64,000 bases of DNA from positions 124,001-188,000 of the IMG/VR virus record IMGVR_UViG_3300005941_000003, one strand, 5' to 3'. Below are positions 28,034-61,144 of the stretch, piece by piece (the stretch's first letter is position 1; each line of letters starts with the position of its first letter). Position numbers and translations under genes: made by a program. The notes under the pieces were generated by a model that saw only the letters and a list, made by a program, of their open reading frames with translations, ran no database searches and was not told the origin of the DNA.

Positions 28034-29851
28034 ATGGCTAATTATGACGACGATGCGGTCAATACACGCGTCAAGTTAAATCAGATATCTCCATCTATGT
28101 GTATGGCGAAGTGGTTGCAAGTGAGTTTGCACTTACCACAGGGTCGTACACATAGTTGTTATCACCCTCCAACACATACCATCCCACTAGATGAACTACG
28201 TGCAAATCCAAACGCACTACATAATACCTCTTTCAAAATGCTTGAACGCAAACAAATGAAAGAAGGCAAAAGACCTGAGGGTTGTCAGTATTGCTGGAAC
28301 GTAGAAGACGCACCAAATCCACCTGAAGGCGGCAGATTAAGTGATAGACATTATCGTTCTAGTGAATGGTGGGTACAAGAAGCATGGGATGAAGTTGTTA
28401 ATAACCCTTGGAACCATGACATATCTCCTAGATACGTTGAAGTAAATTTCAACCAAGCGTGTAACTTTAAATGTGCATACTGTTCTCCCCATTTGTCAAC
28501 AGCATGGGAAGACGATATTAAACAGCATGGGGCTTTCAAGTTTTCAAATAACACCCGCCACAATGAAATTACAAGTTTAGAGAGAAGTGGCTTAATGCCG
28601 CTAAAACTTTCACAAAAAGAAAATCCTTATATTTCTGCATTTTGGGAATGGTGGCCTACTGTATATCCCAACTTGAAAATATTCCGTATGACTGGCGGTG
28701 AACCTCTTATGGATAAAAACACATTTAAGGTGTTGGATTACATACGAGAAAACCCAAATCCAGAATTAGAGATATCTCTTACTACAAATATGTGCCCACC
28801 AGACGATGCGCTGTTTGATAAGTTTATGGACAAAATTAAAAAACTTGAAGAACCTATTATTCCTGAAAAGAGCAACACCCGTGTTGAGTTTGATAAGAGT
28901 ATATATTTGAAGCCACCAGTAGAGGGTAAACGTAAATTAGTATTTTACGTACAAGACCCAAAAGATGGTTCTGATTGGAAGACATGGGAACAGAAAGTTA
29001 TCTATGAAACACTACAGGGTGTATTTGTGGAATCTATGGTCCCAAATACGAAAACAATAAAGTTTAAGGAAATCGAACAGACTTTCACTGCATTAGGTCC
29101 ATGTGATGACGAAGATGACCATAGTTTTGTGTATGCAGCCGACTATGTTCTGGATAAAGAATATAATGTGTGGGAACATCAATATGAGAACGTATACGTC
29201 AAGCACATCAGTGTTTTCATAAGTCTAGATTCTGTCGGAGAGCAAGCAGAATACATCCGTGATGGTTTAGATTTCGAAAAATTAAAACGAAATGTTGACA
29301 GACTATTAAACGAAACACAACGTGTTAGTGTTACATTTATCAATACATTTAATATTCTAAGTATTCCTGGGTTGAAAGGTTTTCTAGAATATATGTTAGA
29401 GTTAAGACGTAAGTTTGGATACCAACATCAATTCGACAACAAACATAGAAAACCCGGACAACGAGTTTGGTTTGACATACCATATTTGAGATATCCTGAC
29501 TGGATTACGATACAACTTTGTGACCAAGATATGTTAGATACGATGCAAGAGTATATCGATTTCATGAAACAAAATGTGTTATCTAATGCTGATTATGGTT
29601 TGTCATATCATGGTTTTAAGAACTACGAAGTGTTGAAATTAGAACGAGATTTAGCTTGGGCAAAAACAGGTGATAAGCTCACTGAACAAGAACTAAGTGA
29701 TAAACTAGTAAGATTTTACGATTACTTCAACGAATACGATAGACGTAGAAATAAAAACTTTTTAGAAACATTCCCAGAAATGACAGATTTCTGGTTAGAA
29801 GCAAGAGAAGAACGAGAGATAAGATATGGGAAGAAAATACTGGGAAGGTGA
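28034..29851 (+). CDS. Radical SAM protein with N-terminal Twitch-type domain (#1; large internal insertion)
   Basis: MC.AKW...SCYH...CQYC N-domain; CNFKCAYC; TGGEPL. Confidence 0.9.
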   Translation: MANYDDDAVNTRVKLNQISPSMCMAKWLQVSLHLPQGRTHSCYHPPTHTIPLDELRANPNALHNTSFKMLERKQMKEGKRPEGCQYCWNVEDAPNPPEGGRLSDRHYRSSEWWVQEAWDEVVNNPWNHDISPRYVEVNFNQACNFKCAYCSPHLSTAWEDDIKQHGAFKFSNNTRHNEITSLERSGLMPLKLSQKENPYISAFWEWWPTVYPNLKIFRMTGGEPLMDKNTFKVLDYIRENPNPELEISLTTNMCPPDDALFDKFMDKIKKLEEPIIPEKSNTRVEFDKSIYLKPPVEGKRKLVFYVQDPKDGSDWKTWEQKVIYETLQGVFVESMVPNTKTIKFKEIEQTFTALGPCDDEDDHSFVYAADYVLDKEYNVWEHQYENVYVKHISVFISLDSVGEQAEYIRDGLDFEKLKRNVDRLLNETQRVSVTFINTFNILSIPGLKGFLEYMLELRRKFGYQHQFDNKHRKPGQRVWFDIPYLRYPDWITIQLCDQDMLDTMQEYIDFMKQNVLSNADYGLSYHGFKNYEVLKLERDLAWAKTGDKLTEQELSDKLVRFYDYFNEYDRRRNKNFLETFPEMTDFWLEAREEREIRYGKKILGR

Positions 29852-31385
29852 AACCTTTCAACTATTCAAAGAACGTATGATCGATTCCGTTAGCGAGAGT
29901 TTTTGCGCAGCGAAATGGTACAATGCTACGATCTGGTTGGGACATGGGCAGACTGCAAGTTGTCACCACCCACCCGGTCACTGGATTCCGCTAGATGAAT
30001 TAAAGGAAAACTTTACTGCTATCCACAACACAAAGCATAAAAAGAAAATGCGTAAGATGATGCAGGAAGGTGATCGACCAGCAGAATGCGAATACTGTTG
30101 GAAAGTTGAAGACATGGGCAGAAATAACATTTCTGACCGCGTGTATAAGACTGAAATCTTTACAGACGAAGATATCATCGCAGCAGGCGATATGCCTTGG
30201 GATGCAGATGTTGAACTTCGTACATTAGAAATTGCGTTTGACCGAGCATGTAACTTTAAATGCTCATATTGTAATCCGGCATTCAGCAGTGCATGGGTTA
30301 AAGATATCAATACATATGGTGCATATCAAAATATTCAGTCCGATGGGCGTGGACACTTTGTTGACACCGCGGAATGGGCAAAACCAATAGCAGACAAAGA
30401 AGATAACAATCCATATATTCAAGCGTTTTGGAAATGGTGGGAATCAAGTCTATCTGACAACCTTGAAGAAATCCGTATCACTGGCGGCGAACCCATTATG
30501 CATACTGGTACTTGGAAACTGTTTGATTGGTTTGAAAAAAATCCAACACGCGGTAGAAATATGAGATTTGCAATCAACTCTAACTTGAATCCAGAGACAA
30601 ACAAGGTTCTTGATAAGATGATTGAAAAATCTTGGCATATACCTCATTTTGAAATTTATACATCTGCGGAAGCACATGGTAAAGGACAAGAGTACATACG
30701 TGATGGCATGGATTACGAATTCTGGAAATCTAATCTTCACCGTATTATGCGCGAGTCAAATGTAAAGAAAACAAACATGATGATGACTATTAACTCATTG
30801 TGCCTTGATACTATTACTGACTTTATGGATGATATGTTAGAGTTTAGAAAAGAATATGGCAGAGAACGCGCACCTGTAATGTCTCTAAACATTCTGCGTT
30901 TCCCATCATTCCAAAGTGCTGCAATTCTACCCGAACACATTAAAACACATTTCAAAAATAAAATTGAAGTTTGGTTTAATCAAGATGGATTGCAACAGCA
31001 ACTTCACGATGGTGAAAAGGCACAAATACAACGTCTTATTGATTATCTTGATGTTGTAAAAACACCACACCGTAATACCGCAGAAACCCCAAAACTATAC
31101 AATGACTTTAAGACATTCTTTGCACAGTACGATATTCGTAGAGGGAAAAGTTTTAGAGATTCATTTAGTCCAATTTTTGTTGAATGGTTTGATAGTATAG
31201 AAGCAGATTCCCCTTCCGCAGAAGATATTCTAAGCAAGCGTATCGTTCTTAATAGTACAATATCCGATCACGATCCGGCAACTATGGATGAGTATGAAGG
31301 TGGTGATGACGCGCATGAACAAAAGAAAACAGTAGGTGGATGGGATACTGAAACTGATTCTTTAGGTGGCGTAGTAGTAGAATAA
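29826..31385 (+). CDS. Radical SAM protein with N-terminal Twitch-type domain (#2)
   Basis: FCAAKW...SCHH...CEYC; CNFKCSYC; TGGEPI. Confidence 0.9.
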   Translation: MGRKYWEGETFQLFKERMIDSVSESFCAAKWYNATIWLGHGQTASCHHPPGHWIPLDELKENFTAIHNTKHKKKMRKMMQEGDRPAECEYCWKVEDMGRNNISDRVYKTEIFTDEDIIAAGDMPWDADVELRTLEIAFDRACNFKCSYCNPAFSSAWVKDINTYGAYQNIQSDGRGHFVDTAEWAKPIADKEDNNPYIQAFWKWWESSLSDNLEEIRITGGEPIMHTGTWKLFDWFEKNPTRGRNMRFAINSNLNPETNKVLDKMIEKSWHIPHFEIYTSAEAHGKGQEYIRDGMDYEFWKSNLHRIMRESNVKKTNMMMTINSLCLDTITDFMDDMLEFRKEYGRERAPVMSLNILRFPSFQSAAILPEHIKTHFKNKIEVWFNQDGLQQQLHDGEKAQIQRLIDYLDVVKTPHRNTAETPKLYNDFKTFFAQYDIRRGKSFRDSFSPIFVEWFDSIEADSPSAEDILSKRIVLNSTISDHDPATMDEYEGGDDAHEQKKTVGGWDTETDSLGGVVVE

Positions 31386-31400: not shown

Positions 31401-32015
31401 ATGAAAATTTTAATTTTAAATTCAATGGGAAGATCCGGTACCACGATGTTACAGGATGCAATTTCTACCGAATACAATCTTAGCAATCTAGGAGAATACC
31501 TTCGAGGTGACTATGATGAAAAATTGAAACATCTTGCATCTACCAATGATTGGGTTTGTAAATATTTTGTCGAATATGGTGATTCACGAAATCATCTAGA
31601 CGATATAAGTTTTATAAATCCAGATTTGATTGTAGTAAATTATCGCAATGACTTGATTGAGCAATACCTCAGTTTTCAAATAAGTCTGTGCAATGACAAA
31701 TGGAATTCTACCGATAAATTATCCTATAGCTCTTTTGAGATTAGCGATTTGCCAAACAGCATAGATTCGTTTTTTCACAGTATTATATTATTTAAAAATA
31801 TTATAGCTGCGTTAAAAAATGTTTATACCATAGAACAAGTTTCATACGAAGAAATAAGCACGGGTAAAATACCAGTTTCTATATTGAAACACCCTCCAGT
31901 GTTCAATACGGTTAAGCAAAATACAATGCTAGAAAAAATAAATCTAGTAAAAAATTATAATCAAGTAAAAGACTACTGGGATGATAAAAACTATGAATAT
32001 CATTTCTTCAACTAA
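31401..32015 (+). CDS. Sulfotransferase-like protein (Stf0-like P-loop)
   Basis: SMGRSGTT 5'-PSB loop, LGEY, YRNDLIEQYLS (3'-PB-like R..S) and VSYEE. Confidence 0.6.
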   Translation: MKILILNSMGRSGTTMLQDAISTEYNLSNLGEYLRGDYDEKLKHLASTNDWVCKYFVEYGDSRNHLDDISFINPDLIVVNYRNDLIEQYLSFQISLCNDKWNSTDKLSYSSFEISDLPNSIDSFFHSIILFKNIIAALKNVYTIEQVSYEEISTGKIPVSILKHPPVFNTVKQNTMLEKINLVKNYNQVKDYWDDKNYEYHFFN

Positions 32016-33096
32016 AATACACGCTGGTTCCCGCCCGACAATAATTTTAGATGGTGACAAGTTAATAGTCTCATTCGATACATATGATCGCGAACATACC
32101 TGCTTAGTTTTACAAGATTTTATAGAAAACAATCGTTCAGACCATTTATATCTCACGATGTTTAATGTCACTGAGGCCTTTCTCAATATGGATTCCGGTT
32201 TATATTTTAAACGTATAAATGATATAGCTTCAAAGGTAAAATATTCGGAGTTCATCAATTGCAATCTCATGGTAGGAGAACATGCAAGCTATTCATCGAA
32301 GTTTCTGTTAACCGACCCGCTCGTAATTGATAAGTTCACCTGTTATCCATATACATTTCTAAATCGAACAATCAACAACATTACCAGTACATTATGTAAA
32401 TCTCCAGATTATCATAATATCCGACCTTCTAAACATGCAATATGTTACAATGGTAATCCTATACTACCACGTGCAATGATACTGGATGGATTAGCAGAAA
32501 TCGGTATGTTGAAAAATTTACATTACAGTTGGATGTTACGCACACGTATAACTGAAAATCTGTTTCAACTATACGATTATTATGTTAAAAATTTCGATTA
32601 TAAGACAAAAGTAGTCCTAGATCATGATGACATATCGATTGGTATAAATCAAGATACCGTTGATGATTTTTTATATTTCAATGACAGTTTAATAGAGATA
32701 GGTGCCGAAACTAATCCAGAGCCGTATCAGTTGATCTACACCGAGAAAACTTGGAAGCCAATATTGTTAGGTAAATTTTTTCTTCTTTATGCACATGCAT
32801 GGTATTACGAAAACTTAGAAAAAATGGGGTTTCAACTATATGATGAAGTTTTTGATTATTCATTTGATCAAGAGTTTGATACTAATAAACGTCTTAGTAT
32901 GTATATCGATGAAGTTAAAAGATTATTATCTATACCTATAGAAGAATTACAACAACAGCTAATTGACATTAATCATAAAGTAATATATAATAAAGAACTT
33001 GCCATCAAACTTAACACCAACACAAACGAATTAGTAAGTAAATATTCGTTTATGTCCCCAAACGTTATGAGGAACTCATTGCATGACACTGAATAG
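31981..33096 (+). CDS. Glycosyltransferase-like protein, 'TEKT' family (#1)
   Basis: C-terminal ET...YTEKTWKPILLGKFF...L.KMGFQLYDEVFDYSFD motif shared with 37426 and 57965. The start could be 31993. Confidence 0.5.
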   Translation: MIKTMNIISSTKIHAGSRPTIILDGDKLIVSFDTYDREHTCLVLQDFIENNRSDHLYLTMFNVTEAFLNMDSGLYFKRINDIASKVKYSEFINCNLMVGEHASYSSKFLLTDPLVIDKFTCYPYTFLNRTINNITSTLCKSPDYHNIRPSKHAICYNGNPILPRAMILDGLAEIGMLKNLHYSWMLRTRITENLFQLYDYYVKNFDYKTKVVLDHDDISIGINQDTVDDFLYFNDSLIEIGAETNPEPYQLIYTEKTWKPILLGKFFLLYAHAWYYENLEKMGFQLYDEVFDYSFDQEFDTNKRLSMYIDEVKRLLSIPIEELQQQLIDINHKVIYNKELAIKLNTNTNELVSKYSFMSPNVMRNSLHDTE

Positions 33097-34501
33097 AAAA
33101 ATACCAATTTGGAAAAACGACGGTAGTTGTTCTTCTGATAGTCCAAATAAGACATTTTGTATGGCACCGTGGACTCATACATATATATCTCCACAGGGTG
33201 AGCGGCGCATGTGCTGTGCGAGCAGGGAACAACACCAATTCCAAAAGCAATACATAGACGCCTCGAATGATGAAAAGTATGGTGAAGTCACAGAAAGTAA
33301 AACTGCTGCCGATGATTTTAATCCTCTCACTCTTGAGGAACATTGGAACTCTCCATACATGAGAGACATACGTAAGAAACTGATGGCGGGTGAAACTATA
33401 CCACAATGTGATGTATGCAATGATGATATTTTGAGCCTTAGTTCGTATCGCAAATGGTTCACTGGCGTACTGTTCAAAGACAAGATACAACAGGCATTTG
33501 ATAGTACCGATGATGATGGGTACACTACCATGCCAACAATATCTTTTGATTATCGTTTTTCTAATTTATGCAACTTTAAGTGTCGCATGTGCGGTGAACT
33601 TCTTAGTTCAAGCTGGGAAGCAGAAAAGAAAAAACACAATATGTGGAGTCCAGAGAATCAACCATTCATGCAGCATGATGTGAAAAGAAAAATGAATGCA
33701 TTTCAAGTTAATGTTGTTGAACCTGAATTCAGAGCCGCAGTTGATGCCGGTATAGTAGAAGAAATTTATTGGGTCGGCGGCGAACCGTTAATGTATGATA
33801 TACATTGGGAAACTCTGGAAAAAATGGTACAGAATGGATCTGCAAAGAATTGCTATTTGCGATACAATTCCAACTTGTCTCGCGTAACGTACAAAGATAA
33901 AAATTTATATGACTATCTTCCACAATTTAAAAACTGGATGATGTGCGCAAGTATCGACGGTACAGGTAAGATTGTAGAATTCATTCGTAGTGGAATTGTA
34001 TGGAAAGAATGGTTAGAAAACTTTAAGCAAGGTGTTGAACTTCCTAATGGCAAAGAACGTATGATACTAGACCTGACAATTACTGGTCCTGGTATGTTTG
34101 CACTAAAAGATTTGTTTGATCTATCACAAGAACTTGGAGTTCGGATAGAAACAAAGATGATGTTTGCCTTTCACCCAGATATTGTATTTTCTCCGTTTGC
34201 TTGGCCAAAAGAAATACTACATCGTATTATAGATGAAAATCTCGCATACATGGAACCACGTGCAACTAATCGTCAGATGACACTTATAAATACGCTTAAA
34301 GAAATGAAAAAGCGACAAACACATATGGAGCAATGGCCAGATACATGGCTTCAAGAAAGTAGAAACGGTAGAAGTTTTCAAGCACATCTTAGTGAAATAC
34401 GCCAAGATAAACTTACAGGCATACCAACACTTGAAGAAATATATAAAGAACATGACACCGAACTTTATGAATGGTGGATGCGATATAACGAACATAACTG
34501 A
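33083..34501 (+). CDS. Radical SAM protein with N-terminal Twitch-type domain (#3)
   Basis: FCMAPW...MCC...CDVC; CNFKCRMC; VGGEPL; ASIDG. Confidence 0.92.
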   Translation: MTLNRKIPIWKNDGSCSSDSPNKTFCMAPWTHTYISPQGERRMCCASREQHQFQKQYIDASNDEKYGEVTESKTAADDFNPLTLEEHWNSPYMRDIRKKLMAGETIPQCDVCNDDILSLSSYRKWFTGVLFKDKIQQAFDSTDDDGYTTMPTISFDYRFSNLCNFKCRMCGELLSSSWEAEKKKHNMWSPENQPFMQHDVKRKMNAFQVNVVEPEFRAAVDAGIVEEIYWVGGEPLMYDIHWETLEKMVQNGSAKNCYLRYNSNLSRVTYKDKNLYDYLPQFKNWMMCASIDGTGKIVEFIRSGIVWKEWLENFKQGVELPNGKERMILDLTITGPGMFALKDLFDLSQELGVRIETKMMFAFHPDIVFSPFAWPKEILHRIIDENLAYMEPRATNRQMTLINTLKEMKKRQTHMEQWPDTWLQESRNGRSFQAHLSEIRQDKLTGIPTLEEIYKEHDTELYEWWMRYNEHN

Positions 34502-47843: not shown

Positions 47844-47848
47844 TATCT

Positions 47849-54072: not shown

Positions 54073-54981
54073 ATGATCGAATATGCTTATATAGAAACCA
54101 CCAATCACTGTAACCTACAATGCTCATTCTGCAATAGACATGAGGTTATAGGGCCACTACAACACATGCCATTACAACGGTTTACAAGATTAATGGAAAG
54201 GCTTAAGGATCATCCTATACATACAGCCAAACTAATGGGTATGGGGGAACCATTCATGCATCCACAATTCGATAAGATTACTAGTACATTTAAGGAATAC
54301 TTTCCCGAATCATTCTTAATCTCCGCTACTAACTGTCAATATACCCTATCACAAGCACCATGGTTCGTCAACTCCCTAAAGCATATTGATATGTTATATC
54401 TATCTATAGATGGGTATCAAGAAACATATGAACGATTCCGTCCACCAAGCAAGTGGAATAAACTAATAAAGTTCTTAGATGAATTATCTACAGTAGATAG
54501 ACACAATTGTCGTATAGTGGTTAATTATGTAGTAAATCCAGGCAATGTAGATGATATTGAACCAGTATATCATGACATCGTATTAAAATATAATCTAGCT
54601 GAATTACGTCTTAACATAGCACAAGACTGGAGTCAAGATAAAAACATGACGGGCGGGTATACCCCAGAACAACTAGAATATCTAAAAGGTTGGGATTCCG
54701 CTATACAGGGTAAAAGTGAATGGGATTATGATCAATGCTTCTGGGTAAAGAACGGTTTATACACTACTGTAGAGGGTAGAGTTCTAGCATGTTGTATGAA
54801 TACTGGTGCGAAAGAATTTGGGAATATATTTTCGGATACTATAGAGAATATTCATGGTGATCTAGAATTCATGAGAGTTAAACATGGGTGTGCCACTAAT
54901 AAGCCAACTGAACACTGTGCTAACTGTTCATATAAAGAATTGGTCCCTATACTGAAAGAACTGGGTATCCATCGTGCCTAA
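54073..54981 (+). CDS. Radical SAM protein with C-terminal SPASM/Twitch domain (#9, conventional architecture)
   Basis: IETTNHCNLQCSFC, GMGEPFMH, LSIDG and C-terminal C.W...ACC...G...C..C. Start moved from 54067 to 54073. Confidence 0.9.
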   Translation: MIEYAYIETTNHCNLQCSFCNRHEVIGPLQHMPLQRFTRLMERLKDHPIHTAKLMGMGEPFMHPQFDKITSTFKEYFPESFLISATNCQYTLSQAPWFVNSLKHIDMLYLSIDGYQETYERFRPPSKWNKLIKFLDELSTVDRHNCRIVVNYVVNPGNVDDIEPVYHDIVLKYNLAELRLNIAQDWSQDKNMTGGYTPEQLEYLKGWDSAIQGKSEWDYDQCFWVKNGLYTTVEGRVLACCMNTGAKEFGNIFSDTIENIHGDLEFMRVKHGCATNKPTEHCANCSYKELVPILKELGIHRA

Positions 54982-56065
54982 AATAAATCCACATATTCTA
55001 AACGTAGAACGTCATAGGGCTCCCTATAGTCCAGTGGATCGCGTACGGTTACATGCAAGTGAACGGGATGTCCCATTCTCAGATGAGTTGATGAGTGCGT
55101 TCTACAGTCGTTTAGATACCCATACGGTGAGTTATTATCCGAATACAGATAGTGGATATAGTGAACTATCACGTTTTTGTGGACATAATAAGAAACATTT
55201 AACTCTATATGAAGGATCCGATCGTGCTATACGGGATATCTTTACAGTATACGGTATACCGAATAGTGAATGTATTATGATGGACCCATGCTTTCCCATG
55301 TATTCCGTATACGCTGTTATGCATGGTTTAACGGTTAAAAGTATTCCAAACACGGTGGCCGTGTGGCCTAAATGGTTAGATGGGGTTTCTACAAGTATAA
55401 AAAAGGGTATAGACACGGTGGCCGACTGGCCTAAAAGGCCTTTCGATATTTTAATTAATTCTATTAATTCTAATACCTCTATAGTGATACTGTCTAATCC
55501 CGGTACTCCCTACGGAGAGTTATATAGTTATTCCGAATTAATTCATTTAATTTCCGTATGTGAGGGATTTAATTGTTTATTAGTTATAGATGAAGCCTAT
55601 ATAGAGTTTGCCGCTACTAGCAGTTTAGAGTGGAGTGCTATAGCGAGTGATAGTTGTATTGTTATACGTACTCTTAGTAAGGGATATGGGAGCGCCGGTA
55701 TACGTATTGGGTATACTATTAGTAGTGAATTGAATAGGGATTTATTATCCCGTGTGAGTAGTATGAATGTTATTAGTGCTCCGGCTGTTGTGTGGTTATC
55801 TATAGTGAATGATTATAGAAGTGAATTCGATAGTTATATATTATCCGTTATTACACACAGAGCTAGTATTGAGCATACGTGTAGATTGCGTGGTATTCCC
55901 TATATAGTGGGTAAGACTAACTTTGTGCATTTGGGATTTAGTTTTAGTGATAGATTTATTACGCGGCCAGTATTGATAGATGGGGTTGAGTATACACGAT
56001 TATCGGTACCGGGATGTAGTAATAGTATGCGTATGTTATTGGGAGAATTAAATGCGTTGGCGTAG
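54974..56065 (+). CDS. Class I/II PLP-dependent enzyme (HisC/CobD-like aminotransferase or decarboxylase)
   Basis: GSD.AI, PCFPMY, SNPGTPYG, IDEAYIEF and RTLSKGYGSAGIRIGY motifs; GTG start. Confidence 0.85.
   Translation: MPKINPHILNVERHRAPYSPVDRVRLHASERDVPFSDELMSAFYSRLDTHTVSYYPNTDSGYSELSRFCGHNKKHLTLYEGSDRAIRDIFTVYGIPNSECIMMDPCFPMYSVYAVMHGLTVKSIPNTVAVWPKWLDGVSTSIKKGIDTVADWPKRPFDILINSINSNTSIVILSNPGTPYGELYSYSELIHLISVCEGFNCLLVIDEAYIEFAATSSLEWSAIASDSCIVIRTLSKGYGSAGIRIGYTISSELNRDLLSRVSSMNVISAPAVVWLSIVNDYRSEFDSYILSVITHRASIEHTCRLRGIPYIVGKTNFVHLGFSFSDRFITRPVLIDGVEYTRLSVPGCSNSMRMLLGELNALA
55350..55440. repeat. Imperfect 23-bp direct repeat (63-nt period) with internal inverted repeats, inside the CDS
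   Basis: acacggtggccgtgtggcctaaa (55350-72) and acacggtggccgactggcctaaa (55413-35); hairpins acacgg-tgg-ccgtgt and ggcct-aaa-aggcc. Confidence 0.85.
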
Positions 56066-56717
56066 ACTGTTTACATTTGGATGTTCTTATACAGAATATT
56101 ATTGGGAAACATGGGCTGATATTATAGGGCGAGATTTGGGTATACCGTACTATAATTATGGATTAAGTGGTTGTGGTAATAGTTTAATTGCACATCGTAT
56201 GTTAGAAGCAGATATAGAACATGGTTTGAGTTCTGACGATTTAATATTAGTAAATTGGACTAGCTGGTGGAGAGAAGATCGTGTTAATCCGCGAGGGGAT
56301 TGGTTGGTACGTGGTCACATCTTTAATAACCCACATTATTCGGGTGAATTTATTAAACGTTATTGGAACACATATAATGATACTGCAAAGAATGCTGGTG
56401 CGATAATTAGTAGCAATCGTGCATTTCCAATTGTGTTTCAGTCTCACATGACTGATTATGAAATAGATGATTACGCCGATGCTTTGAAAAGTTTTTCTAC
56501 ATTGGTTTCTGCATTACCAGAAAAACATTTATTTGATGTTTCAAATAATTCTAAATTTGGCGGTACTAGTGCAGATGCGCACCCAGATATATTATGTCAT
56601 TTAAATCATGCTATTAAAATTTATGATTATTGCGGGTTAACTATGTCAGAGGAAACTGTAGAATGGTGTAATGCGCGACAAGAAGAACTAATAAATAGAA
56701 ATAAGAAAAAAACTTAA
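56052..56717 (+). CDS. SGNH-like protein (#4)
   Basis: LFTFGCSYT, NYGLSGCGN, VNWTS..REDR and DAHP motifs. Confidence 0.7.
   Translation: MRWRRLFTFGCSYTEYYWETWADIIGRDLGIPYYNYGLSGCGNSLIAHRMLEADIEHGLSSDDLILVNWTSWWREDRVNPRGDWLVRGHIFNNPHYSGEFIKRYWNTYNDTAKNAGAIISSNRAFPIVFQSHMTDYEIDDYADALKSFSTLVSALPEKHLFDVSNNSKFGGTSADAHPDILCHLNHAIKIYDYCGLTMSEETVEWCNARQEELINRNKKKT
56691..56697 (+). promoter_or_regulatory. Probable late promoter ATAAATA upstream of the full-length UDP-Glc dehydrogenase
   Basis: About 40 nt upstream of ATG 56736, with a GGAG SD in between. Confidence 0.45.
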
Positions 56718-56735
56718 AATAACGGAGAGTATTGA

Positions 56736-57965
56736 ATGAGTAAAATTGGATTTATTGGCGTTGGTAAACTAGGCATGCCCTGTGCAGAAACGGTTGCACG
56801 TAAGGGACATGATACGAAAGGTTACGATGTAGCACCACGTAGCAGTGAACATATCACAGTGGTGAATTCAATTGAAGAACTTGTACATGATCGTGATATT
56901 GTGTTTATTGCAGTACCTACACCACATGATCCTCTTTACGATGGCAATGCTCCAACTGCACATTTAGAGCCAAAAGACTTTGATTATTCTATTGTGCGAG
57001 AATGTATCATTGAAGCAAACAAACATATGAATTCTAGTCAATTACTAGTATTAATTAGTACAGTTTTGCCGGGAACAACTCGCCGTGAATTTATTAAACA
57101 TATTACTAACCCACGATTTGTTTATAACCCATATTTAATTGCGATGGGTTCGGTTGCATGGGATATGGTAAATCCAGAGATGGTTATGATCGGTACGCAA
57201 GATGGCGATGCTAATGGTGATGCGCGTGAATTAACTGATTTCTATCGTACAATTATGGAAAATGATCCTCGCTATGTAGTAGGTACTTGGGACGAATGCG
57301 AAGCAATTAAAGTATTTTACAATACATTTATTTCCGCTAAAATCGGTCTTGTTAATATGATTCAAGATGTTGCAGAGGCGCAAGGTAATATTAATGTTGA
57401 CGTAGTTACTGATGCACTAGCACAATCAACAATGCGTATTATGGGACCACAGTATATGAAAGCCGGTATGGGAGATGGCGGCGGTTGTCACCCACGTGAT
57501 AATATTGCACTACGATATATGGCAAGTGAATTAAATCTAGGCTATGATTTATTTGATTCGATTATGGGCGCACGTGAAATTCAAGCAAAGAATATTGCAA
57601 AGCGTCTTGCATATTATGCAACAAAGCATTCACTGCCAGTTGTTATTCACGGCAAAGCATACAAGCCAAATGTCCCATATGTCGAGGGCAGCTATTCTAT
57701 GTTAATCGGCAGCTATCTAGATGAAAGGGGCATTCATCATTATTATGTTGATCCATTGACAGGTGATACTGTTATTCCTTCTGGACCAGCTGTATTTTTA
57801 ATGGCTCACAGTGCGTCAACTACATATGAATATACTGGAAATACGCACGAAGATAAATTGTATTGTGAAATTCCACAAGGTTCAATTGTCATTGACCCAT
57901 GGCGTAAATTCGAAAAAGTGGATGGCATTACTGTTTATCATTATGGAAATTCGAGACAGAATTAA
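56736..57965 (+). CDS. UDP-glucose/GDP-mannose 6-dehydrogenase family protein (full length)
   Basis: GFIGVGKLG, IAVPTP, STVLPGTT, KVFYNTFIS, GDGGGCHPRD, GKAYKP and IDPW motifs. Confidence 0.9.
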   Translation: MSKIGFIGVGKLGMPCAETVARKGHDTKGYDVAPRSSEHITVVNSIEELVHDRDIVFIAVPTPHDPLYDGNAPTAHLEPKDFDYSIVRECIIEANKHMNSSQLLVLISTVLPGTTRREFIKHITNPRFVYNPYLIAMGSVAWDMVNPEMVMIGTQDGDANGDARELTDFYRTIMENDPRYVVGTWDECEAIKVFYNTFISAKIGLVNMIQDVAEAQGNINVDVVTDALAQSTMRIMGPQYMKAGMGDGGGCHPRDNIALRYMASELNLGYDLFDSIMGAREIQAKNIAKRLAYYATKHSLPVVIHGKAYKPNVPYVEGSYSMLIGSYLDERGIHHYYVDPLTGDTVIPSGPAVFLMAHSASTTYEYTGNTHEDKLYCEIPQGSIVIDPWRKFEKVDGITVYHYGNSRQN

Positions 57966-59188
57966 TGATTTTTCAAATTGATAAACTAATTGATAACCTA
58001 AAAAATAATAATTGGAATTATTTTTGGGATAGAATTAATATTGATGAATATGTCGCCAGACCTACAGCAATTTATATATACGCCGGGGGTAATGGTGACC
58101 TAGAATATGTACACATGCCATATAATAAATTTTTTCAAGATTTTATGGAAAAATACAAATTAAAGATTACCAGTGAATTAAATAGAGAGATAAGAACAGG
58201 TAAAATATTTGAAAGACCTATAGTTTTTCAAACATGTGAAGGTTTTACATTAGAAGAAAATACTCAATTTATAAGAGATATTTTAAATGAATATACAGAT
58301 AAAATACCGGATATTTTTAATAGAGTTATATTAATTCATTCAAGTTTTAACCATTCACTTGATACATATAGAGTTAATAACGTTATAAGACTTCACGATA
58401 TTGTATTCACCTTTGTTTATCTTGCAGGCAAATACCCTAAATATTTTGTTGATAAAGATTATAGTATAATACCAACAGAAAAAAGTTTTAAAAAAATATT
58501 CGGATGTTTTATTACCAGAAATGCATATGATAGGGTAAAAATATACTATCATATAATTAAAAACTATAAAAATGATAGTGTTGCATATTGTCATAGTTCA
58601 GAAATACAAAAAGCATTAAATGATATATTTGATGATTATGACATTGATCAACACACAAATCATGATATGGTAAAAGTAAATCAAAATATTGACAATTTAA
58701 ATAAAACCTATCAACAGTTTGTAATAACCGATTTACAAGAAAAAATGAAAGACGTATTTGTTGATGTTATTAGTGAAACTGTATTTTTTGAGGATAATAA
58801 TGTTTGGGTTACAGAAAAAACAGTTACACCTATAACACTTGGTTTACCTTTTATTATTTCATCAACCTCTGGAATTTATGAGTTGTTACATTATTTGGGA
58901 TTTAAAACATTTTCAGATTTTTGGGACGAATCATTTGACGCTGAGACTGATCATATAGAACGTAATAAAAAATTTTTGAATACATTAGATTATATAGCAG
59001 AAACATATAATACCGAAGAAAAAAGAAAAGAAGCATACAAAAAGATGCTTCCAATTCTAGAACATAATCGCCAGCGTATGATTTATTTTTTTGAAAACCC
59101 AAGAGAAGTGTTAGGTTATATCAAACACACAGATAAAGCAATTGCAGAATTAGAATCTATATTAAAATCCGCATATCCAAATAGTTAA
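57965..59188 (+). CDS. Glycosyltransferase-like protein, 'TEKT' family (#3; very AT-rich)
   Basis: VISET...VTEKTVTPI..GLPFI...LGFKTFSDFWDESFD motif. Confidence 0.5.
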   Translation: MIFQIDKLIDNLKNNNWNYFWDRINIDEYVARPTAIYIYAGGNGDLEYVHMPYNKFFQDFMEKYKLKITSELNREIRTGKIFERPIVFQTCEGFTLEENTQFIRDILNEYTDKIPDIFNRVILIHSSFNHSLDTYRVNNVIRLHDIVFTFVYLAGKYPKYFVDKDYSIIPTEKSFKKIFGCFITRNAYDRVKIYYHIIKNYKNDSVAYCHSSEIQKALNDIFDDYDIDQHTNHDMVKVNQNIDNLNKTYQQFVITDLQEKMKDVFVDVISETVFFEDNNVWVTEKTVTPITLGLPFIISSTSGIYELLHYLGFKTFSDFWDESFDAETDHIERNKKFLNTLDYIAETYNTEEKRKEAYKKMLPILEHNRQRMIYFFENPREVLGYIKHTDKAIAELESILKSAYPNS

Positions 59189-59952
59189 TCTCTGCGTTCA
59201 ATATCGTCTTCTGTTAGTTTATCTCCCATCCAAACTTCAATTACTTTAGCAGGAGTTTCTCCAACATTTACTGCTTTGTGCCAGCATAATGCAGGTATAT
59301 CAAAACTGTTTCCTTGTGGAACAATAAATGTTTGTTTGCCTTCATCATCTTCTACTGTTATTTCAATGACGCCTTCAATAACATGCCAGTGTTCACTACG
59401 ATTAAAATGGCGCTGATCACTCAAAGATTTACCTGCTTCAAATTCTAGTTCTTTTACTTGCCAACCGGGACCTTTATGTAGAACGGTATAAATGCCCCAT
59501 GCACGTTCGGTCTTTGGTTTACTCCAGTTTTCAAGTATCCAAGACGAACTATTCATCTTTCGTGAACCGCCTACTTTCCAAGCAAATTCAACATCTTTAT
59601 TATCGTGAAATGTTTTAAACTCTGGTACGTTTGTGTTAACGCGGTCTCCGCCATTTGCAAAGACTACTTTCCACTTAGATCCTTTAGTTGATAGAACTTG
59701 CATAATAGCGGCACATGCAGTGCCATCATCGTCGTTGAACCCTATAACTTCATCAACCATTTCTAAGTGTTTGATAATATTTGCACGTTCCTCAAACGAC
59801 ATAAATGGTCTACCCTTTTTTCGAGTAAGCCAAGCGTCACTATTCACACCTACAATTAGATGGTCTCCCAACTCTTTGGCAGCTTTGAAATATTCGATAT
59901 GTCCTGAATGCAGTGGGTCAAACCCACCAGTCACTAAAACTACTTTACTCAT
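59185..59952 (-). CDS. Cytidylyltransferase (HIGH family) fused to an MPI type II-like cupin
   Basis: TGGFDPLHSGH, VGVNSD.WL.RKKG, FANGGDR and K.NSSS; then RAWG.Y...SLSDQRH..RSEHW. Confidence 0.88.
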   Translation of the reverse strand: MSKVVLVTGGFDPLHSGHIEYFKAAKELGDHLIVGVNSDAWLTRKKGRPFMSFEERANIIKHLEMVDEVIGFNDDDGTACAAIMQVLSTKGSKWKVVFANGGDRVNTNVPEFKTFHDNKDVEFAWKVGGSRKMNSSSWILENWSKPKTERAWGIYTVLHKGPGWQVKELEFEAGKSLSDQRHFNRSEHWHVIEGVIEITVEDDEGKQTFIVPQGNSFDIPALCWHKAVNVGETPAKVIEVWMGDKLTEDDIERRD

Positions 59953-61144
59953 TATTCACCTCAACAAATGGTTTTGTACGTTCCCATAGCCATGGGTTGA
60001 ATTCACCCCAATGCTCATTTCGTATTCTATTCACTGCGGCATCGGTGTTGACAAAATGTTTAAAGTCGCCTGTCTCATTTAATTCGTTCAGCATCCACTT
60101 GAATATAGAATAACCTGGGTAGTTGTCTGATATAGAATTTAAATATTCTGCTACTTCTTTTTTAACTTCGTCTGGTAGATTTCTAGGTAGCATCCAATCA
60201 GGACCATCCGCCATAACATAATGTGTCCAGCGCATTCCCTTTTGTAGTGAATAATCAATCAACTCGTGGAACGAATTACAGTTGTAGATAGATGCAACAC
60301 TATGGAAACTGATAGTGGTTTTGCTCTTAGTTGCTTTGCGAGTTTTTTCCCACTCCAAGAACCAATCAACTACTTCCTCTACTCTCTGCCAAGAACTACC
60401 TTTGCGTAGAAAATCGTTCAACTTACCATAACTGTCTACACTCAATTGCACGTTGACTTCTTTGCATTGATTTAGTAGACCGGTCAATTCTTCGTTTGGG
60501 GTAGTTGTGGTATTTGTTGCAATAAGTATCTTTAATTCAGGTAGATTACATTTCTTTAGAACACTAATGAATTTCTCTTGCTCCATCAGAGGTTCGCCGC
60601 CGATCATTTTGATAAACTTTAGATTACTTAAATCGTAGTCTTCAATGATACTATTCTTTGCGACAACACCACGTCTTGGTTCGCCGCCCCATCCTAGCTT
60701 TTTAGCATCTGCGTACCAGTTTGTACTTAATTCAGGTCCGCACATACGACATCTGTTATTGCATACGTTACTCAGTGCAAGGTCGATGTTTGTTAGATAG
60801 TGATAATCTCTGTTTGAATTTTCTGCAAATTCAGCAGCATCAGGAATACCAAAGTTAATGAAAGGAGATGAAATGTCAGTACGCATACTGCTACCAGAAA
60901 TTTCTTCGTCGCGATAACAGCTTGCACAACCTGGGTGCGCTTCATCGTTGCGCATCTTTTCACGAAGATCAACCATGAAAGGGTGATTGAATGGATCAGG
61001 GTGATCAATTCTTAAATCTTCTGGTACTTCTTCTTGTCTGAAATAACAACATGGAAAAATCCCACCATCTGGTCTAATAGCCAGATGATGGAATGGAAGT
61101 GGACATGCGTGTTTATGTTTTATTTGGAAATTTCTGTCTGCCAT
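59945..61144 (-). CDS. Radical SAM protein with N-terminal Twitch-type domain (#10)
   Basis: ACPLPF...PCC...CASC; CNNRCRMC; IGGEPL. Confidence 0.92.
   Translation of the reverse strand: MADRNFQIKHKHACPLPFHHLAIRPDGGIFPCCYFRQEEVPEDLRIDHPDPFNHPFMVDLREKMRNDEAHPGCASCYRDEEISGSSMRTDISSPFINFGIPDAAEFAENSNRDYHYLTNIDLALSNVCNNRCRMCGPELSTNWYADAKKLGWGGEPRRGVVAKNSIIEDYDLSNLKFIKMIGGEPLMEQEKFISVLKKCNLPELKILIATNTTTTPNEELTGLLNQCKEVNVQLSVDSYGKLNDFLRKGSSWQRVEEVVDWFLEWEKTRKATKSKTTISFHSVASIYNCNSFHELIDYSLQKGMRWTHYVMADGPDWMLPRNLPDEVKKEVAEYLNSISDNYPGYSIFKWMLNELNETGDFKHFVNTDAAVNRIRNEHWGEFNPWLWERTKPFVEVNNE

What the first reader, a model, noticed from the sequence alone, without database searches (positions are those of the whole stretch)
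28034..61144. Nine paralogous 'inverted' radical SAM enzymes (Twitch-type Cys domain N-terminal), in two ligand subtypes
Seen: each has C-x~12-CC...CxxC ahead of CxxxCxxC and GGE(P/T), and most end in D..R...F...(F/Y)PE. Copies #1 and #2 replace CC with CYH or CHH, suggesting different auxiliary-cluster ligation. Established: SPASM/Twitch domains are usually C-terminal, and Twitch enzymes such as BtrN oxidise sugar-like substrates. I know the N-terminal-Twitch family only as functionally uncharacterised. Inference: the divergent paralogs each act on a different sugar position or residue (dehydrogenation, epimerisation, C-C chemistry). Keeping ten oxygen-sensitive Fe-S enzymes implies strong selection.
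Basis: partly seen in the sequence, partly recalled or inferred. Interest (0 to 1): 0.85.

Follow-up and report, generated by a model that had tools for sequence, protein, structure and literature searches.

The report
Jumbo-phage cassette of nine radical-SAM enzymes
A giant bacteriophage carries nine old, well-conserved copies of an uncharacterised iron-sulfur "radical SAM" enzyme type, sitting next to likely sugar-transferring enzymes just after its tail genes; hundreds of related phage fragments carry the same gene block, which probably builds an unusual, heavily modified sugar coat, though its chemistry is untested.

Summary
Nine ORFs between 28034 and 61144 score 238-384 bits against NCBIfam NF033640 (N_Twi_rSAM, cutoff 170). 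A tenth ORF (54067-54981) is an ordinary radical SAM enzyme with a C-terminal twitch.

- **Age of the paralogs:** they are 20-36% identical to each other. Each sits in its own orthologous clade shared with many other viral contigs, where orthologs are 60-88% identical. Synonymous sites are saturated and pN is 0.09-0.27.
- **Conserved residues:** the four twitch cysteines, CX3CX2C, GGE, one Ser and one Arg are conserved in all nine copies and across the clades. CC versus C-Y-H and C-H-H is a real, clade-fixed difference, but at a fifth position.
- **New here:** the genes belong to a fixed-order cassette: giant virion protein, p220, e, s123, a, b, c, R1, R2, R8, R5, R3. It appears in most of about 160 fetched viral loci, some on 250-365 kb contigs. 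Proteins b and c look like GT-A glycosyltransferases. No island protein has a membrane segment.
- **Best reading (about 0.4):** cytoplasmic radical tailoring of a phage-made glycan, probably on virion proteins.

The family is catalogued but uncharacterised, and the substrate is inferred, not shown.

The parts
28034..29851 (+). R1: N-terminal-twitch radical SAM enzyme, C-Y-H subtype, 605 aa, with an insertion of about 170 aa in the barrel
   Evidence: NF033640 302.8 bits. Cys at 23, 42, 84, 87 and CX3CX2C at 143. The R1 clade has 72 sequences from 66 loci. The L165 ortholog is 68% identical over 600 codons.
29826..31385 (+). R2: N-terminal-twitch radical SAM enzyme, C-H-H subtype, 519 aa
   Evidence: NF033640 306.1 bits. 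The R2 clade has 55 sequences from 53 loci, support 0.999. R1+R2 are monophyletic, support 0.997. It is 51% identical to Ralstonia phage RsoM2USA gp202.
33083..34501 (+). R3: N-terminal-twitch radical SAM enzyme, CC subtype, 472 aa
   Evidence: NF033640 320.6 bits. The R3 clade has 56 sequences from 55 loci.
35354..36598 (+). R4: N-terminal-twitch radical SAM enzyme, CC subtype, 414 aa
   Evidence: NF033640 367.8 bits. Its clade has 8 sequences, support 1.0.
44646..45773 (+). R5: N-terminal-twitch radical SAM enzyme, CC subtype, 375 aa
   Evidence: NF033640 247.3 bits. The R5 clade has 63 sequences from 58 loci.
46541..47734 (+). R6: N-terminal-twitch radical SAM enzyme, CC subtype, 397 aa
   Evidence: NF033640 337 bits. 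It is 88% identical to its L001 ortholog, with dN/dS 0.09.
47798..49108 (+). R7: N-terminal-twitch radical SAM enzyme, CC subtype, GGET. TTG start at 47798, alternative ATG at 47849
   Evidence: NF033640 252.1 bits. It belongs to a rare clade of 4 sequences.
49236..50441 (+). R8: N-terminal-twitch radical SAM enzyme, CC subtype, 401 aa. This is the most widespread type and the one whose structure was modelled
   Evidence: NF033640 383.9 bits. AF2 pLDDT 95. The clade has 105 sequences from 83 loci.
59945..61144 (-). R10: N-terminal-twitch radical SAM enzyme, CC subtype, 399 aa, on the opposite strand
   Evidence: NF033640 238.2 bits. It is nearly an orphan within the fetched set: a clade of 2.
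54067..54981 (+). R9: conventional-order radical SAM enzyme with a C-terminal twitch (CX3CX2C at residue 15). Not a family member, but its twitch is colinear with the N-terminal domain of the nine
   Evidence: Pfam Radical_SAM at 9-170 and SPASM at 224-287. NF033640 65.7 bits, below the cutoff of 170. C224-x17-CC-x40-CxxC has the same spacing as R8. A gapless BLASTP match gives E 3e-4.
24758..28030 (+). Cassette genes a (24758-25624), b (25596-26477), p192 (26474-27052) and c (27053-28030). Proteins b and c look like GT-A-fold glycosyltransferases, and a is a paralog of b
   Evidence: Homologs of c occur in 62, of b in 53 and of a in 51 of the fetched viral loci. The AF2 model of c has pLDDT 88. 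Its best PDB folds are GT-A glycosyltransferases, but the match is weak: E about 1e-3, TM about 0.3. Asp64 and Asp66 in an I-D-G-D-N motif are invariant. The Atlas gives GT2-like and GT8/Nucleotid_trans leads. Proteins a and b are 23% identical.
21724..24758 (+). Conserved cassette head: p220 (21724-22386), e paralogs (22448-23335 and 23354-24331) and s123 (24387-24758). Function unknown
   Evidence: The order VSP, p220, e, s123, a, b, c recurs in most of 80 loci centred on c. p220 matches phrog_11259. The two e copies are 29% identical.
12929..21667 (+). Giant virion structural protein (2912 aa) directly upstream of the cassette. It is a candidate acceptor of the product; this is an inference
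   Evidence: phrog_10938 'virion structural protein', E 1.9e-162. It is 27% identical to the structural protein next to the baseplate wedge in PA5oct-like phages. Homologs of it were detected in about 25 of the 80 c-centred loci, always at the upstream end of the conserved block.
31981..33096 (+). g family, copy 1 of 3 (the others are 37426-38613 and 57965-59188). A phage-only family interspersed with the radical SAM genes. Function unknown, with a weak GT10-like lead
   Evidence: The three copies are paralogs. Homologs occur in 30-49 fetched loci. The Atlas shows viral-only clusters, some fused to epimerase or methyltransferase domains.
38603..44637 (+). Nucleotide-sugar tailoring block: cupin (38603), short DegT-like (39872), sugar C-methyltransferase (40480), TylF O-methyltransferase (41673), AhpC/TSA peroxiredoxin (42428), short UDP-Glc/GDP-Man dehydrogenase-like (42956), SDR epimerase/dehydratase (43747)
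   Evidence: Pfam hits. The same block occurs inverted in L194.
51368..53115 (+). Kinase-like gene (weak APH/TCAD9 match, 51368-52078) and MobA-like nucleotidyltransferase (52069-53115): a possible sugar-1-phosphate activation pair
   Evidence: Pfam. The same pair follows the R8 ortholog in L001.
54974..59952 (.). Class I/II aminotransferase (54974-56065, +), h (56052-56717, +), full-length UDP-Glc/GDP-Man dehydrogenase (56736-57965, +), g copy 3 (57965-59188, +), and a cytidylyltransferase-like domain fused to a mannose-6-P-isomerase-type cupin (59185-59952, -)
   Evidence: Pfam. The same cytidylyltransferase-cupin fusion heads the radical SAM array in L002.

Best explanation
The region is the expanded form of a conserved jumbo-phage gene cassette. 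The cassette makes and radically tailors a glycan in the host cytoplasm.

**Shown**
- Nine members of the N-terminal-twitch radical SAM family (NF033640) are present.
- Each belongs to a separate, old orthologous group.
- All keep the SAM-cluster cysteines, the GGE SAM-binding motif and four twitch cysteines.
- They are inherited in a fixed order directly after the baseplate and giant structural protein genes, together with three to five small soluble proteins.
- All genes tested are under purifying selection.

**Inferred**
- Two of the small proteins (b and c) are GT-A nucleotide-sugar transferases.
- Each radical SAM enzyme reductively cleaves SAM at its CX3CX2C [4Fe-4S] cluster. The 5'-deoxyadenosyl radical then abstracts one particular C-H hydrogen of a sugar, which may be an NDP-sugar or an already transferred residue.
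- The fully Cys-ligated N-terminal twitch cluster has no open iron site. It therefore acts as an electron relay, as in BtrN and anSME.
- The likely outcomes are dehydrogenation to keto-sugars, which feed the neighbouring aminotransferase-like, C-methyltransferase and cupin enzymes, or epimerisation/dehydration.
- The extra Cys of the CC types is a candidate H-atom donor or redox partner. The C-Y-H and C-H-H types (R1, R2) replace it with acid/base residues and so probably do different chemistry.
- The island encodes no membrane protein and always follows the virion structural module on the same strand. The acceptor is therefore most likely soluble, probably a virion protein such as the 2912-aa structural protein or fibres. 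That would give the particle a rare-sugar coat.
For: **Family and catalytic residues**
- Membership and motifs.
- Conserved in all nine copies and in nearly all sequences of every clade: C8, C26, C68, C71, the CX3CX2C cysteines, GGE, S239 and R251.
- The AF2 model has pLDDT 95. It shows an N-terminal beta-hairpin plus helix carrying the four Cys, followed by a partial barrel.

**Age and selection**
- Paralogs are 20-36% identical and orthologs 60-88%.
- pS is 0.5-0.8 and pN 0.09-0.27.

**Cassette**
- All 86 loci fetched with radical SAM queries hold 2-9 copies per roughly 21 kb.
- The order e, a, b, c, R1, R2, R8, R5, R3 recurs.
- VSP2912, p220, e, s123, a, b, c, R1 recurs in 80 further loci.

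**Glycan context**
- Pfam finds NDP-sugar enzymes.
- Protein c folds nearest to GT-A glycosyltransferases and has an invariant DxD-like motif.
- Protein b resembles GT8/Nucleotid_trans models, TM 0.60-0.67.
- Related arrays sit next to NeuB, sulfotransferase, carbamoyltransferase and UDP-Glc dehydrogenase genes.
- On long bacterial chromosomal contigs, neighbours include GT1, GT2 and GT9, a sulfotransferase, a carbamoyltransferase and an ABC-2 exporter.

**Soluble acceptor**
- No hydrophobic segment appears in any island ORF.

**Working together**
- Single polypeptides with two or three complete modules exist: 28 of the best 150 cluster representatives are 750 aa or longer.

**Not a known pathway**
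- No equivalog model comes near its cutoff.
Against: - No substrate, product or expression data exist.
- The GT-A assignments are weak: Foldseek E about 1e-3 and TM about 0.3, with no Pfam, NCBIfam or PHROG hit.
- In 61 neighbours sampled from other viral arrays, most have no Pfam match, and only a few are sugar enzymes.
- The closest solved folds and secondary HMM hits of the radical SAM core are a mix of peptide maturases, lipid enzymes, nucleotide enzymes and sugar enzymes.
- Position next to structural genes could simply reflect a hot spot for insertions.
- I could not read model coordinates, so the position of the extra Cys relative to the active site is unknown.
Confidence: 0.4

Rival explanations
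1. The chemistry is the same kind of sugar tailoring, but the product is for the host envelope rather than the virion. On this reading the cassette is an auxiliary metabolic island. It remodels LPS, capsule or another surface glycan of the infected cell, for example for superinfection exclusion or to stop progeny re-adsorbing, and it relies on host lipid-carrier and export machinery.
For: On long bacterial chromosomal contigs the family occurs in 1-2 copies, next to GT1, GT2 and GT9, a sulfotransferase, a carbamoyltransferase and ABC-2 transporter genes. The window holds complete-looking NDP-sugar activation and tailoring genes. From established knowledge, phage-encoded O-antigen modification is well known.
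Against: No island protein has a membrane segment. There is no initiating phosphoglycosyltransferase, flippase, polymerase or exporter. The cassette is fixed next to the virion structural module and co-oriented with it in about 100 contigs. That is unusual for host-remodelling genes.
Confidence: 0.15
2. The nine enzymes modify proteins or peptides, not sugars. They would introduce cross-links, epimerised residues or oxidised side chains into virion proteins or a secreted peptide, as SPASM/twitch maturases do. The GT-A-like proteins would then glycosylate the same polypeptide.
For: The secondary HMM and fold matches of the core include many peptide maturases: anSME, CteB, SuiB, PapB, SkfB, the SCIFF maturase and EpeE. 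Among the best folds for protein c are the peptide S-glycosyltransferases SunS and ThuS. The cassette lies next to a 2912-aa structural protein.
Against: No PqqD/RRE-type recognition domain was detected in any of the nine. No conserved short precursor ORF is visible, and the genes abut or overlap. A dense NDP-sugar enzyme context is hard to explain on this reading. Those maturase hits score 18-49 bits against cutoffs of 300-850.
Confidence: 0.2
3. The enzymes act on nucleotides or on phage DNA. They would either build a sugar-bearing hypermodified base that protects the genome from host nucleases, or make modified nucleotides in the way viperin, MoaA or QueE do.
For: Weak matches to viperin, MoaA, QueE and NrdG appear in HMM and fold searches. 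The acceptor appears to be soluble. From established knowledge, large phages often glycosylate or hypermodify their DNA. Some related arrays lie near nucleotide-metabolism genes such as SAICAR synthase.
Against: All such matches are far below the family cutoffs, for example viperin at 20-34 bits against 180. MoaA-type substrate binding needs an open iron site on a three-Cys cluster, whereas four Cys are conserved here. The cassette is tied to the structural module and not to replication genes. No DNA-modification transferase or hydroxymethylase was found in the window.
Confidence: 0.12

Closest known systems
NCBIfam NF033640 'N_Twi_rSAM' (twitch domain-containing radical SAM protein)
   Same: All nine ORFs exceed the curated cutoff over nearly the full model length. 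They share the permuted order: twitch first, then the CX3CX2C barrel.
   Different: The model is a 'subfamily' with no assigned function. I found no paper that characterises a member. The window adds nine deep sub-clades, two of which (C-Y-H and C-H-H) lack the second Cys of the CC pair.
BtrN (2-deoxy-scyllo-inosamine dehydrogenase) and anSME: twitch/SPASM radical SAM dehydrogenases
   Same: A radical SAM core plus an auxiliary [4Fe-4S] domain with the C-x9-15-G-x4-C...CxxC signature. All four ligands are Cys, so there is no open iron site, which points to an electron-relay role. By recall, the spacing here (18, 42, 3) is close to BtrN's Cys169, 187, 232, 235. anSME is among the best fold matches, TM about 0.4.
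   Different: The domain order is permuted. There is no detectable sequence membership: no PDB sequence hit at E<=1, and TM is only 0.35-0.41. The substrate is unknown. A conserved extra Cys, or Y-H/H-H, follows ligand 2.
Virus-encoded virion glycosylation systems (Mimivirus fibril glycan clusters, chlorovirus capsid glycans, glycosylated mycobacteriophage virions); comparison from established knowledge
   Same: Virus-encoded soluble glycosyltransferases plus rare-sugar (NDP-sugar) tailoring enzymes, which act in the cytoplasm on structural proteins without lipid carriers.
   Different: None of those systems is known to use radical SAM enzymes, let alone five to nine. Here glycosylation of the virion is only inferred.
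Radical SAM-rich marine T4-like environmental viral genome TARA_ERS488813_N000010 (Nishimura et al. 2017, PMC5332604)
   Same: A phage genome with 12 radical SAM genes, noted alongside Fe-S assembly genes and cited together with the SPASM/twitch review.
   Different: It is a one-sentence mention. There is no family assignment, no cassette structure, no link to glycosyltransferases or structural genes, and no function.
BlsE, DesII and AprD4: radical SAM enzymes acting on sugar or aminoglycoside substrates
   Same: They appear among the fold matches of the core. They act by H-abstraction from a sugar C-H followed by decarboxylation, deamination or dehydration, which is chemistry plausible here.
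   Different: The matches are generic for the radical SAM barrel (TM 0.3-0.4, 11-18% identity). There is no shared accessory domain order.

Membership tests
Radical SAM superfamily | CX3CX2C motif providing three Cys to the SAM-binding [4Fe-4S] cluster | tested here: met
   Present once in each of the ten ORFs. Conserved in all nine copies and across about 420 relatives, apart from truncated ORFs.
Radical SAM superfamily | GGE (SAM amino-group binding) motif and a match to Pfam PF04055 | tested here: met
   GGEP or GGET occurs in all nine. PF04055 scores above the 29.5-bit cutoff in eight of nine; R2 scores 25.4 bits.
NCBIfam NF033640 N_Twi_rSAM | Whole-protein score above the curated cutoff of 170 bits | tested here: met
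   The nine ORFs score 238.2-383.9 bits. The tenth (54067-54981) scores 65.7 bits and is not a member.
Twitch domain (one auxiliary cluster) | C-x9-15-G-x4-C ... C-x2-C signature on a beta-hairpin followed by a helix | tested here: met
   C8-x12-G21-x4-C26 ... C68-x2-C71 is invariant in alignment A1. The AF2 model has strands at 14-17 and 22-24 and a helix at 66-76. Pfam SPASM matches the N-terminus in six of nine.
Twitch domain (one auxiliary cluster) | Actually binds one [4Fe-4S] cluster | not testable with these tools
   This needs Fe/S quantification and EPR or Mossbauer spectroscopy on reconstituted protein.
Full SPASM domain (two auxiliary clusters) | Seven or eight conserved Cys, including CX2CX5CX3C | tested here: not met
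   Only four conserved Cys plus one clade-specific Cys lie outside the SAM motif.
Known cofactor or nucleoside radical SAM enzymes (MoaA, viperin, QueE, NirJ/AhbD, PqqE, MftC) | Score above the equivalog cutoff of the NCBIfam model | tested here: not met
   The best scores are 18-49 bits against cutoffs of 180-650.
RiPP-maturing SPASM/twitch radical SAM enzymes | RRE/PqqD-like peptide-recognition domain, and an adjacent short precursor gene | tested here: not met
   No such domain was reported by Pfam or NCBIfam for any of the nine. The genes abut or overlap, with no conserved short ORF between them. Distant RRE-like folds cannot be excluded.
GT-A glycosyltransferases (for cassette proteins b and c) | Rossmann-like GT-A fold with a DxD metal/NDP-sugar motif | tested here: inconclusive
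   For c, the AF2 model has pLDDT 88, and its best PDB matches are nearly all GT-A glycosyltransferases or sugar-1-P nucleotidyltransferases. The matches are weak, E 1e-3 to 1e-2 and TM about 0.3. D64 and D66 are invariant. For b, TM is 0.60-0.67 to GT8/Nucleotid_trans model clusters. There are no Pfam, NCBIfam or PHROG hits.

The most novel reading that the evidence does not exclude
A clade of aquatic jumbo phages (contigs up to 365 kb) carries a vertically inherited 'radical glycan' cassette. It would comprise several GT-A transferases plus a core of five mechanistically distinct N-terminal-twitch radical SAM enzymes, expanded to nine here. Together they would build a sugar decoration of unprecedented chemistry on virion proteins. 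That would be the first glycan pathway dominated by radical SAM steps and the first function for a family of more than 7,700 sequence clusters.
Probability: 0.3. Interest if true: 0.85.

Novelty: new variant of a known kind. Interest (0 to 1): 0.62.

Why it matters
- **Size of the unknown.** The N-terminal-twitch radical SAM family is large: at least 7,723 clusters at 50% identity score E<=1e-30 in 1.84 billion representatives. It has a curated name but no known reaction.
- **What this window offers.** It shows the family in its richest context so far: nine deep paralogs under purifying selection, tied to putative glycosyltransferases and to the virion structural module, in a cassette repeated across hundreds of viral contigs.
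- **A concrete, testable setting.** Five core orthologous groups give a defined starting set. Two active-site variants (CC versus Y-H/H-H) suggest different chemistry. Natural two- and three-module fusions suggest the enzymes act in sequence.
- **Cultured carriers exist.** Ralstonia phage RsoM2USA, Vibrio phage K566 and KVP40-like phages all carry family members.
- **If the glycan reading is right.** It would reveal new radical carbohydrate chemistry and a new way in which large phages decorate their particles.
- **An open puzzle either way.** It is unclear how so many oxygen-labile Fe-S enzymes are kept working by phages from aquatic, presumably largely oxic, samples. A peroxiredoxin gene sits inside the island.

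Tried and rejected
- **DNA similarity to sequenced phages.** There was no megablast match. Only protein-level relatives exist. The structural genes resemble PA5oct-, SCTP-2- and Rak2-like jumbo myoviruses at 27-40% identity.
- **Solved structures by sequence.** Nothing at E<=1.
- **Solved structures by fold.** Only generic radical SAM cores, TM 0.35-0.41, so no functional transfer is possible.
- **Literature.** No paper mentions NF033640 or characterises an N-terminal-twitch enzyme. The only related item is a passing note of a phage genome with 12 radical SAM genes. A cyanophage paper that calls a lone radical SAM gene an 'antibiotic synthesis gene' gave nothing usable.
- **NCBIfam and PHROGs on ten unknown island ORFs.** Essentially blank.
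- **Recent tandem duplication.** Rejected: paralogs are 20-36% identical, while orthologs in other phages are 60-88%.
- **'Different ligation' in copies 1 and 2.** Rejected as the simplest reading, because all four canonical ligands are retained.
- **Pseudogenes or inactive copies.** Rejected: catalytic residues are conserved in all nine copies, and pN is far below pS.
- **Bacterial origin of each clade.** Inconclusive. The genome scan was seeded with R8-type patterns, so bacterial sequences fall mostly in the R8 clade by construction. Many 'MAG' contigs with arrays look like mis-binned phage.
- **tRNA genes.** None found.
- **Active-site geometry.** I could not read the coordinates of the AF2 models, so the distance of the extra Cys, Tyr or His from the SAM cluster was not measured.

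Full report
**What the window is**

The window has 32-43% G+C and almost all genes on the + strand up to about 50.4 kb.

The first 22 kb encode phage tail and baseplate proteins:
- a lysozyme-like virion protein (1342-4392);
- a baseplate hub with an OB fold and a VanY peptidase domain (4410-6455);
- a ClpP-like prohead protease (7107-7733, - strand);
- a 1435-aa baseplate wedge protein (8619-12926);
- a 2912-aa virion structural protein (12929-21667).

The wedge and the giant protein are 27-40% identical to those of jumbo myoviruses such as Salicola SCTP-2, PA5oct, Rak2-like phages and Atu_ph07. There is no DNA-level match to any sequenced phage.

R8 is 100% identical to a gene on the 342-kb IMG/VR contig IMGVR_UViG_3300027757_000397. 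The window therefore comes from an uncultured jumbo phage.

**Checking the observation**

Ten ORFs between 28034 and 61144 contain CX3CX2C. In nine of them the motif lies 110-163 residues in, behind a Cys-rich N-terminal domain.
- All nine score 238-384 bits on NCBIfam NF033640, 'twitch domain-containing radical SAM protein (N_Twi_rSAM)', whose cutoff is 170.
- Pfam places its SPASM model at the N-terminus in six of them.
- The tenth ORF (54067-54981) has the usual order, with CX3CX2C at residue 15 and a C-terminal twitch. It scores only 65.7 bits on NF033640.

- The first spacing is C-x17-21-C, with a Gly four residues before the second Cys. That is the canonical twitch/SPASM signature.
- The (F/Y)PE tail is present in five of nine.
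- CYH and CHH in copies 1 and 2 are confirmed.

**Are the copies alive, and how old are they?**

Pairwise identity among the nine is 20-36%. R1/R2 (36%) and R6/R8 (34%) are the closest pairs.

I fetched 86 metagenomic and viral loci with relatives, and every one carries 2-9 family members per roughly 21 kb. I built a maximum-likelihood tree of 419 such sequences.
- Each window paralog falls in its own clade, shared with many other contigs.
- Clade sizes are R1 72 sequences from 66 loci, R2 55 from 53, R3 56 from 55, R5 63 from 58 and R8 105 from 83.
- The rarer clades are R4 (8), R6 (7), R7 (4) and R10 (2).
- Orthologs in other phages are 60-88% identical.
- R1 and R2 together form a clade with support 0.997.

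Against the nearest orthologs, synonymous sites are saturated or nearly so (pS 0.49-0.83), while pN is 0.09-0.27. Where dS could be estimated, dN/dS is 0.09-0.29.

This is therefore an ancient paralog set under purifying selection. It is neither a recent tandem expansion nor a set of decaying copies.

**The cluster ligands**

In a 61-sequence alignment, the following are invariant, in 49236-50441 numbering:
- C8, G21, C26, C68 and C71 (the twitch residues);
- C122, C126 and C129 (the SAM-cluster cysteines), and the neighbouring N123;
- S134;
- G182-G183-E184;
- S239 and R251.

The same residues are conserved in nearly every sequence of every clade of the 419-sequence set; the exceptions are gaps in truncated ORFs, and G21 varies in the R3 clade.

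The four twitch Cys are spaced 18, 42 and 3 residues apart. By recall this is almost the spacing of BtrN's auxiliary-cluster ligands (169, 187, 232, 235). They are retained in R1 and R2 as well.

The difference lies in the residue after the second ligand:
- Cys in seven clades;
- Tyr-His in R1-type sequences (67 of 69);
- His-His in R2-type sequences (54 of 54).

The two subtypes are therefore real and ancient, but the simplest reading is an unchanged four-Cys cluster with a different neighbouring functional residue. With no open iron site, the cluster is best seen as an electron relay (as in BtrN and anSME) and not as a substrate anchor (as in MoaA). That step is inference.

**Structure**

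An AlphaFold2 model of R8 is confident: pLDDT 95, pTM 0.90. It shows a beta-hairpin and helices carrying the four Cys, followed by the barrel.
- No solved structure resembles the whole protein. The best hits are TM 0.35-0.41 to GDGT-MAS, anSME, BlsE, CteB, viperin, MoaA, DesII and AprD4.
- There is no PDB sequence hit at E<=1.
- In a library of predicted viral structures, the full fold recurs in many proteins of uncultured tailed phages (TM 0.7-0.93) and in KVP40's 'MoaA/NifB/PqqE family protein' (TM 0.64). All carry only generic annotation.

The conventional enzyme R9 in the same window has C224-x17-CC-x40-CxxC at its C-terminus. That is the same spacing as the N-terminal domain of R8, and the two align without gaps (E 3e-4). 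The domain permutation is therefore visible within one genome.

**The cassette**

I labelled each radical SAM gene by clade and each neighbour by BLAST. A fixed order then appears in dozens of contigs: e, a, b, c, R1, R2, R8, R5, R3, with g-family genes interspersed.

I then fetched 80 further loci centred on c. These extend the conserved block upstream: giant structural protein, p220, e, s123, a, b, (p192), c, R1. Some of these contigs are 250-365 kb long.

The window holds an expanded version:
- R3 and R4 follow R2;
- a block of nucleotide-sugar genes is inserted;
- R5, R6, R7 and R8 follow;
- a second sugar block with R9, and the divergent R10, lie on the far side.

Genes from 21724 to 50441 abut or overlap on one strand.

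**What the partners are**

Pfam identifies the following:
- a cupin;
- a short DegT-like protein;
- an NDP-hexose C-methyltransferase;
- a TylF-type O-methyltransferase;
- an AhpC/TSA peroxiredoxin;
- two UDP-Glc/GDP-Man dehydrogenase-like proteins;
- an SDR epimerase/dehydratase;
- a kinase-like protein;
- a MobA-like nucleotidyltransferase;
- a class I/II aminotransferase;
- a cytidylyltransferase fused to a cupin.

The conserved small proteins a, b, c, e and g have no Pfam, NCBIfam or PHROG assignment. Three further lines of evidence bear on them:
- An AF2 model of c (pLDDT 88) matches almost only GT-A glycosyltransferases and sugar-1-phosphate nucleotidyltransferases, though weakly. Protein c also has an invariant D-G-D motif.
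- The Atlas model of b resembles GT8/Nucleotid_trans clusters at TM 0.60-0.67.
- The g family is phage-only, with a faint GT10-like lead and fusions to epimerase or methyltransferase domains.

No island protein has a hydrophobic segment. The phage therefore brings no lipid-carrier transferase, flippase, polymerase or exporter.

Elsewhere:
- Related arrays sit beside NeuB, sulfotransferase and carbamoyltransferase genes.
- In a sample of 61 neighbours from other viral arrays, most are unassignable.
- On long bacterial chromosomal contigs the family occurs in one or two copies, with mixed neighbours: further radical SAM/SPASM genes, PhyH dioxygenases, GT1, GT2 and GT9, a sulfotransferase, a carbamoyltransferase and an ABC-2 transporter.

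**Best explanation and rivals**

The most coherent reading (confidence about 0.4) has four parts:
- The cassette builds and radically tailors a glycan in the cytoplasm.
- Each orthologous group abstracts a different sugar hydrogen.
- The twitch cluster moves the electron.
- The product goes onto a soluble acceptor, most likely a virion protein, given the invariable position after the structural genes.

Three rivals remain:
- the same chemistry aimed at host envelope glycans (0.15);
- protein or peptide modification (0.2);
- nucleotide or DNA modification (0.12).

None of the rivals is excluded. The radical SAM core itself gives no substrate signal, because its distant relatives span peptide, lipid, nucleotide and sugar enzymes.

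Database proteins with two or three complete modules in a single chain argue that the paralogs act in sequence on one substrate.

**Comparison with what is known, and novelty**

The enzymes are members of a catalogued but uncharacterised family. The family has at least 7,723 clusters at 50% identity with E<=1e-30.

Phage genomes rich in radical SAM genes have been noted once in passing: 12 genes in a marine T4-like genome (PMC5332604).

In the papers I could search, I found no description of:
- the fixed-order cassette;
- its link to GT-A-like proteins and to the structural module;
- the five core orthologous groups;
- the clade-fixed CC versus Y-H and H-H variants.

I rate the finding as a new variant of a known kind.

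Cultured carriers make it testable:
- Ralstonia phage RsoM2USA gp202 is a 51%-identical R2 ortholog.
- Vibrio phage K566 has four family members.
- KVP40-like phages have one distant member.

Noticed in passing
window 51058/51059 (inside ORF 50438-51376, - strand): The matching IMG/VR contig (342,181 bp) ends at the position that corresponds to window coordinate about 51058, yet the window runs on for 13 kb through an intact ORF. The window therefore seems to wrap across the contig ends. That suggests a circular or terminally redundant genome, or a different assembly of the same phage.
   Followed up: partly
window 54067-54981: The conventional radical SAM enzyme R9 carries a C-terminal twitch with exactly the same C-x17-CC-x40-CxxC spacing as the N-terminal domain of the nine permuted enzymes. 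The two align without gaps (E 3e-4). It is a possible non-permuted cousin within the same genome.
   Followed up: partly
window 42428-42955: An AhpC/TSA peroxiredoxin gene sits in the middle of the Fe-S enzyme and sugar island, and a homolog lies in the related block of L194. It could protect the oxygen-labile clusters or recycle a catalytic thiol.
   Followed up: no
window 39872-40480 and 42956-43750: Two 'half-length' enzymes are present: a 202-aa DegT-like protein and a 264-aa UDP-Glc/GDP-Man dehydrogenase-like protein that lacks the C-terminal domain. Both short forms are conserved at the same length in other phage contigs (195-228 aa; 263-264 aa at 77-99% identity). They are therefore genuine short proteins and not fragments.
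   Followed up: partly
window 28034-29851 (R1, residues about 255-420): R1 has an insertion of about 170 residues within the barrel that the other eight lack. The L165 ortholog keeps it (600 aligned codons, 68% identity), but other R1-type proteins are shorter (509-576 aa). No domain was recognised in it.
   Followed up: no
database proteins P0121, P0136, P0218 and others: 28 of the best 150 cluster representatives are 750 aa or longer. Those inspected hold two or three complete N-twitch radical SAM modules, each with its own CC, CX3CX2C and GGE motifs, in a single predicted polypeptide.
   Followed up: partly
GTDB loci L097, L108, L114, L115, L118, L123, L125, L130, L132, L141, L148, L154 (Elusimicrobia MAG MJ-2014_bin-0981); L134 and L145 (Haliscomenobacter MAG): Some 'bacterial' MAGs carry family members on a dozen separate contigs, or in phage-like arrays of five. 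These are probably jumbo-phage contigs that were binned with bacteria. Long bacterial chromosomal contigs carry only one or two copies.
   Followed up: partly
L163 (Ralstonia phage RsoM2USA, gp202) and L164 (Vibrio phage K566, gp303, gp305, gp306, gp308): Cultured phages carry family members annotated only as hypothetical or 'radical SAM domain-containing'. RsoM2USA gp202 has the same S-C-H-H-P-P motif as R2 and is 51% identical to it.
   Followed up: partly
window 4410-6455 and 7107-7733: The baseplate hub protein ends in a VanY D-Ala-D-Ala carboxypeptidase domain, where a lysozyme domain would be more usual. A ClpP-like prohead protease is encoded on the opposite strand inside the tail module.
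   Followed up: no
window 50438-51376 and 53112-54050 (both - strand): Two 312-aa ORFs on the minus strand both match phrog_13607 (unknown function) weakly. They flank the kinase and nucleotidyltransferase pair. BLASTP at E<=1e-3 did not detect them as paralogs.
   Followed up: no
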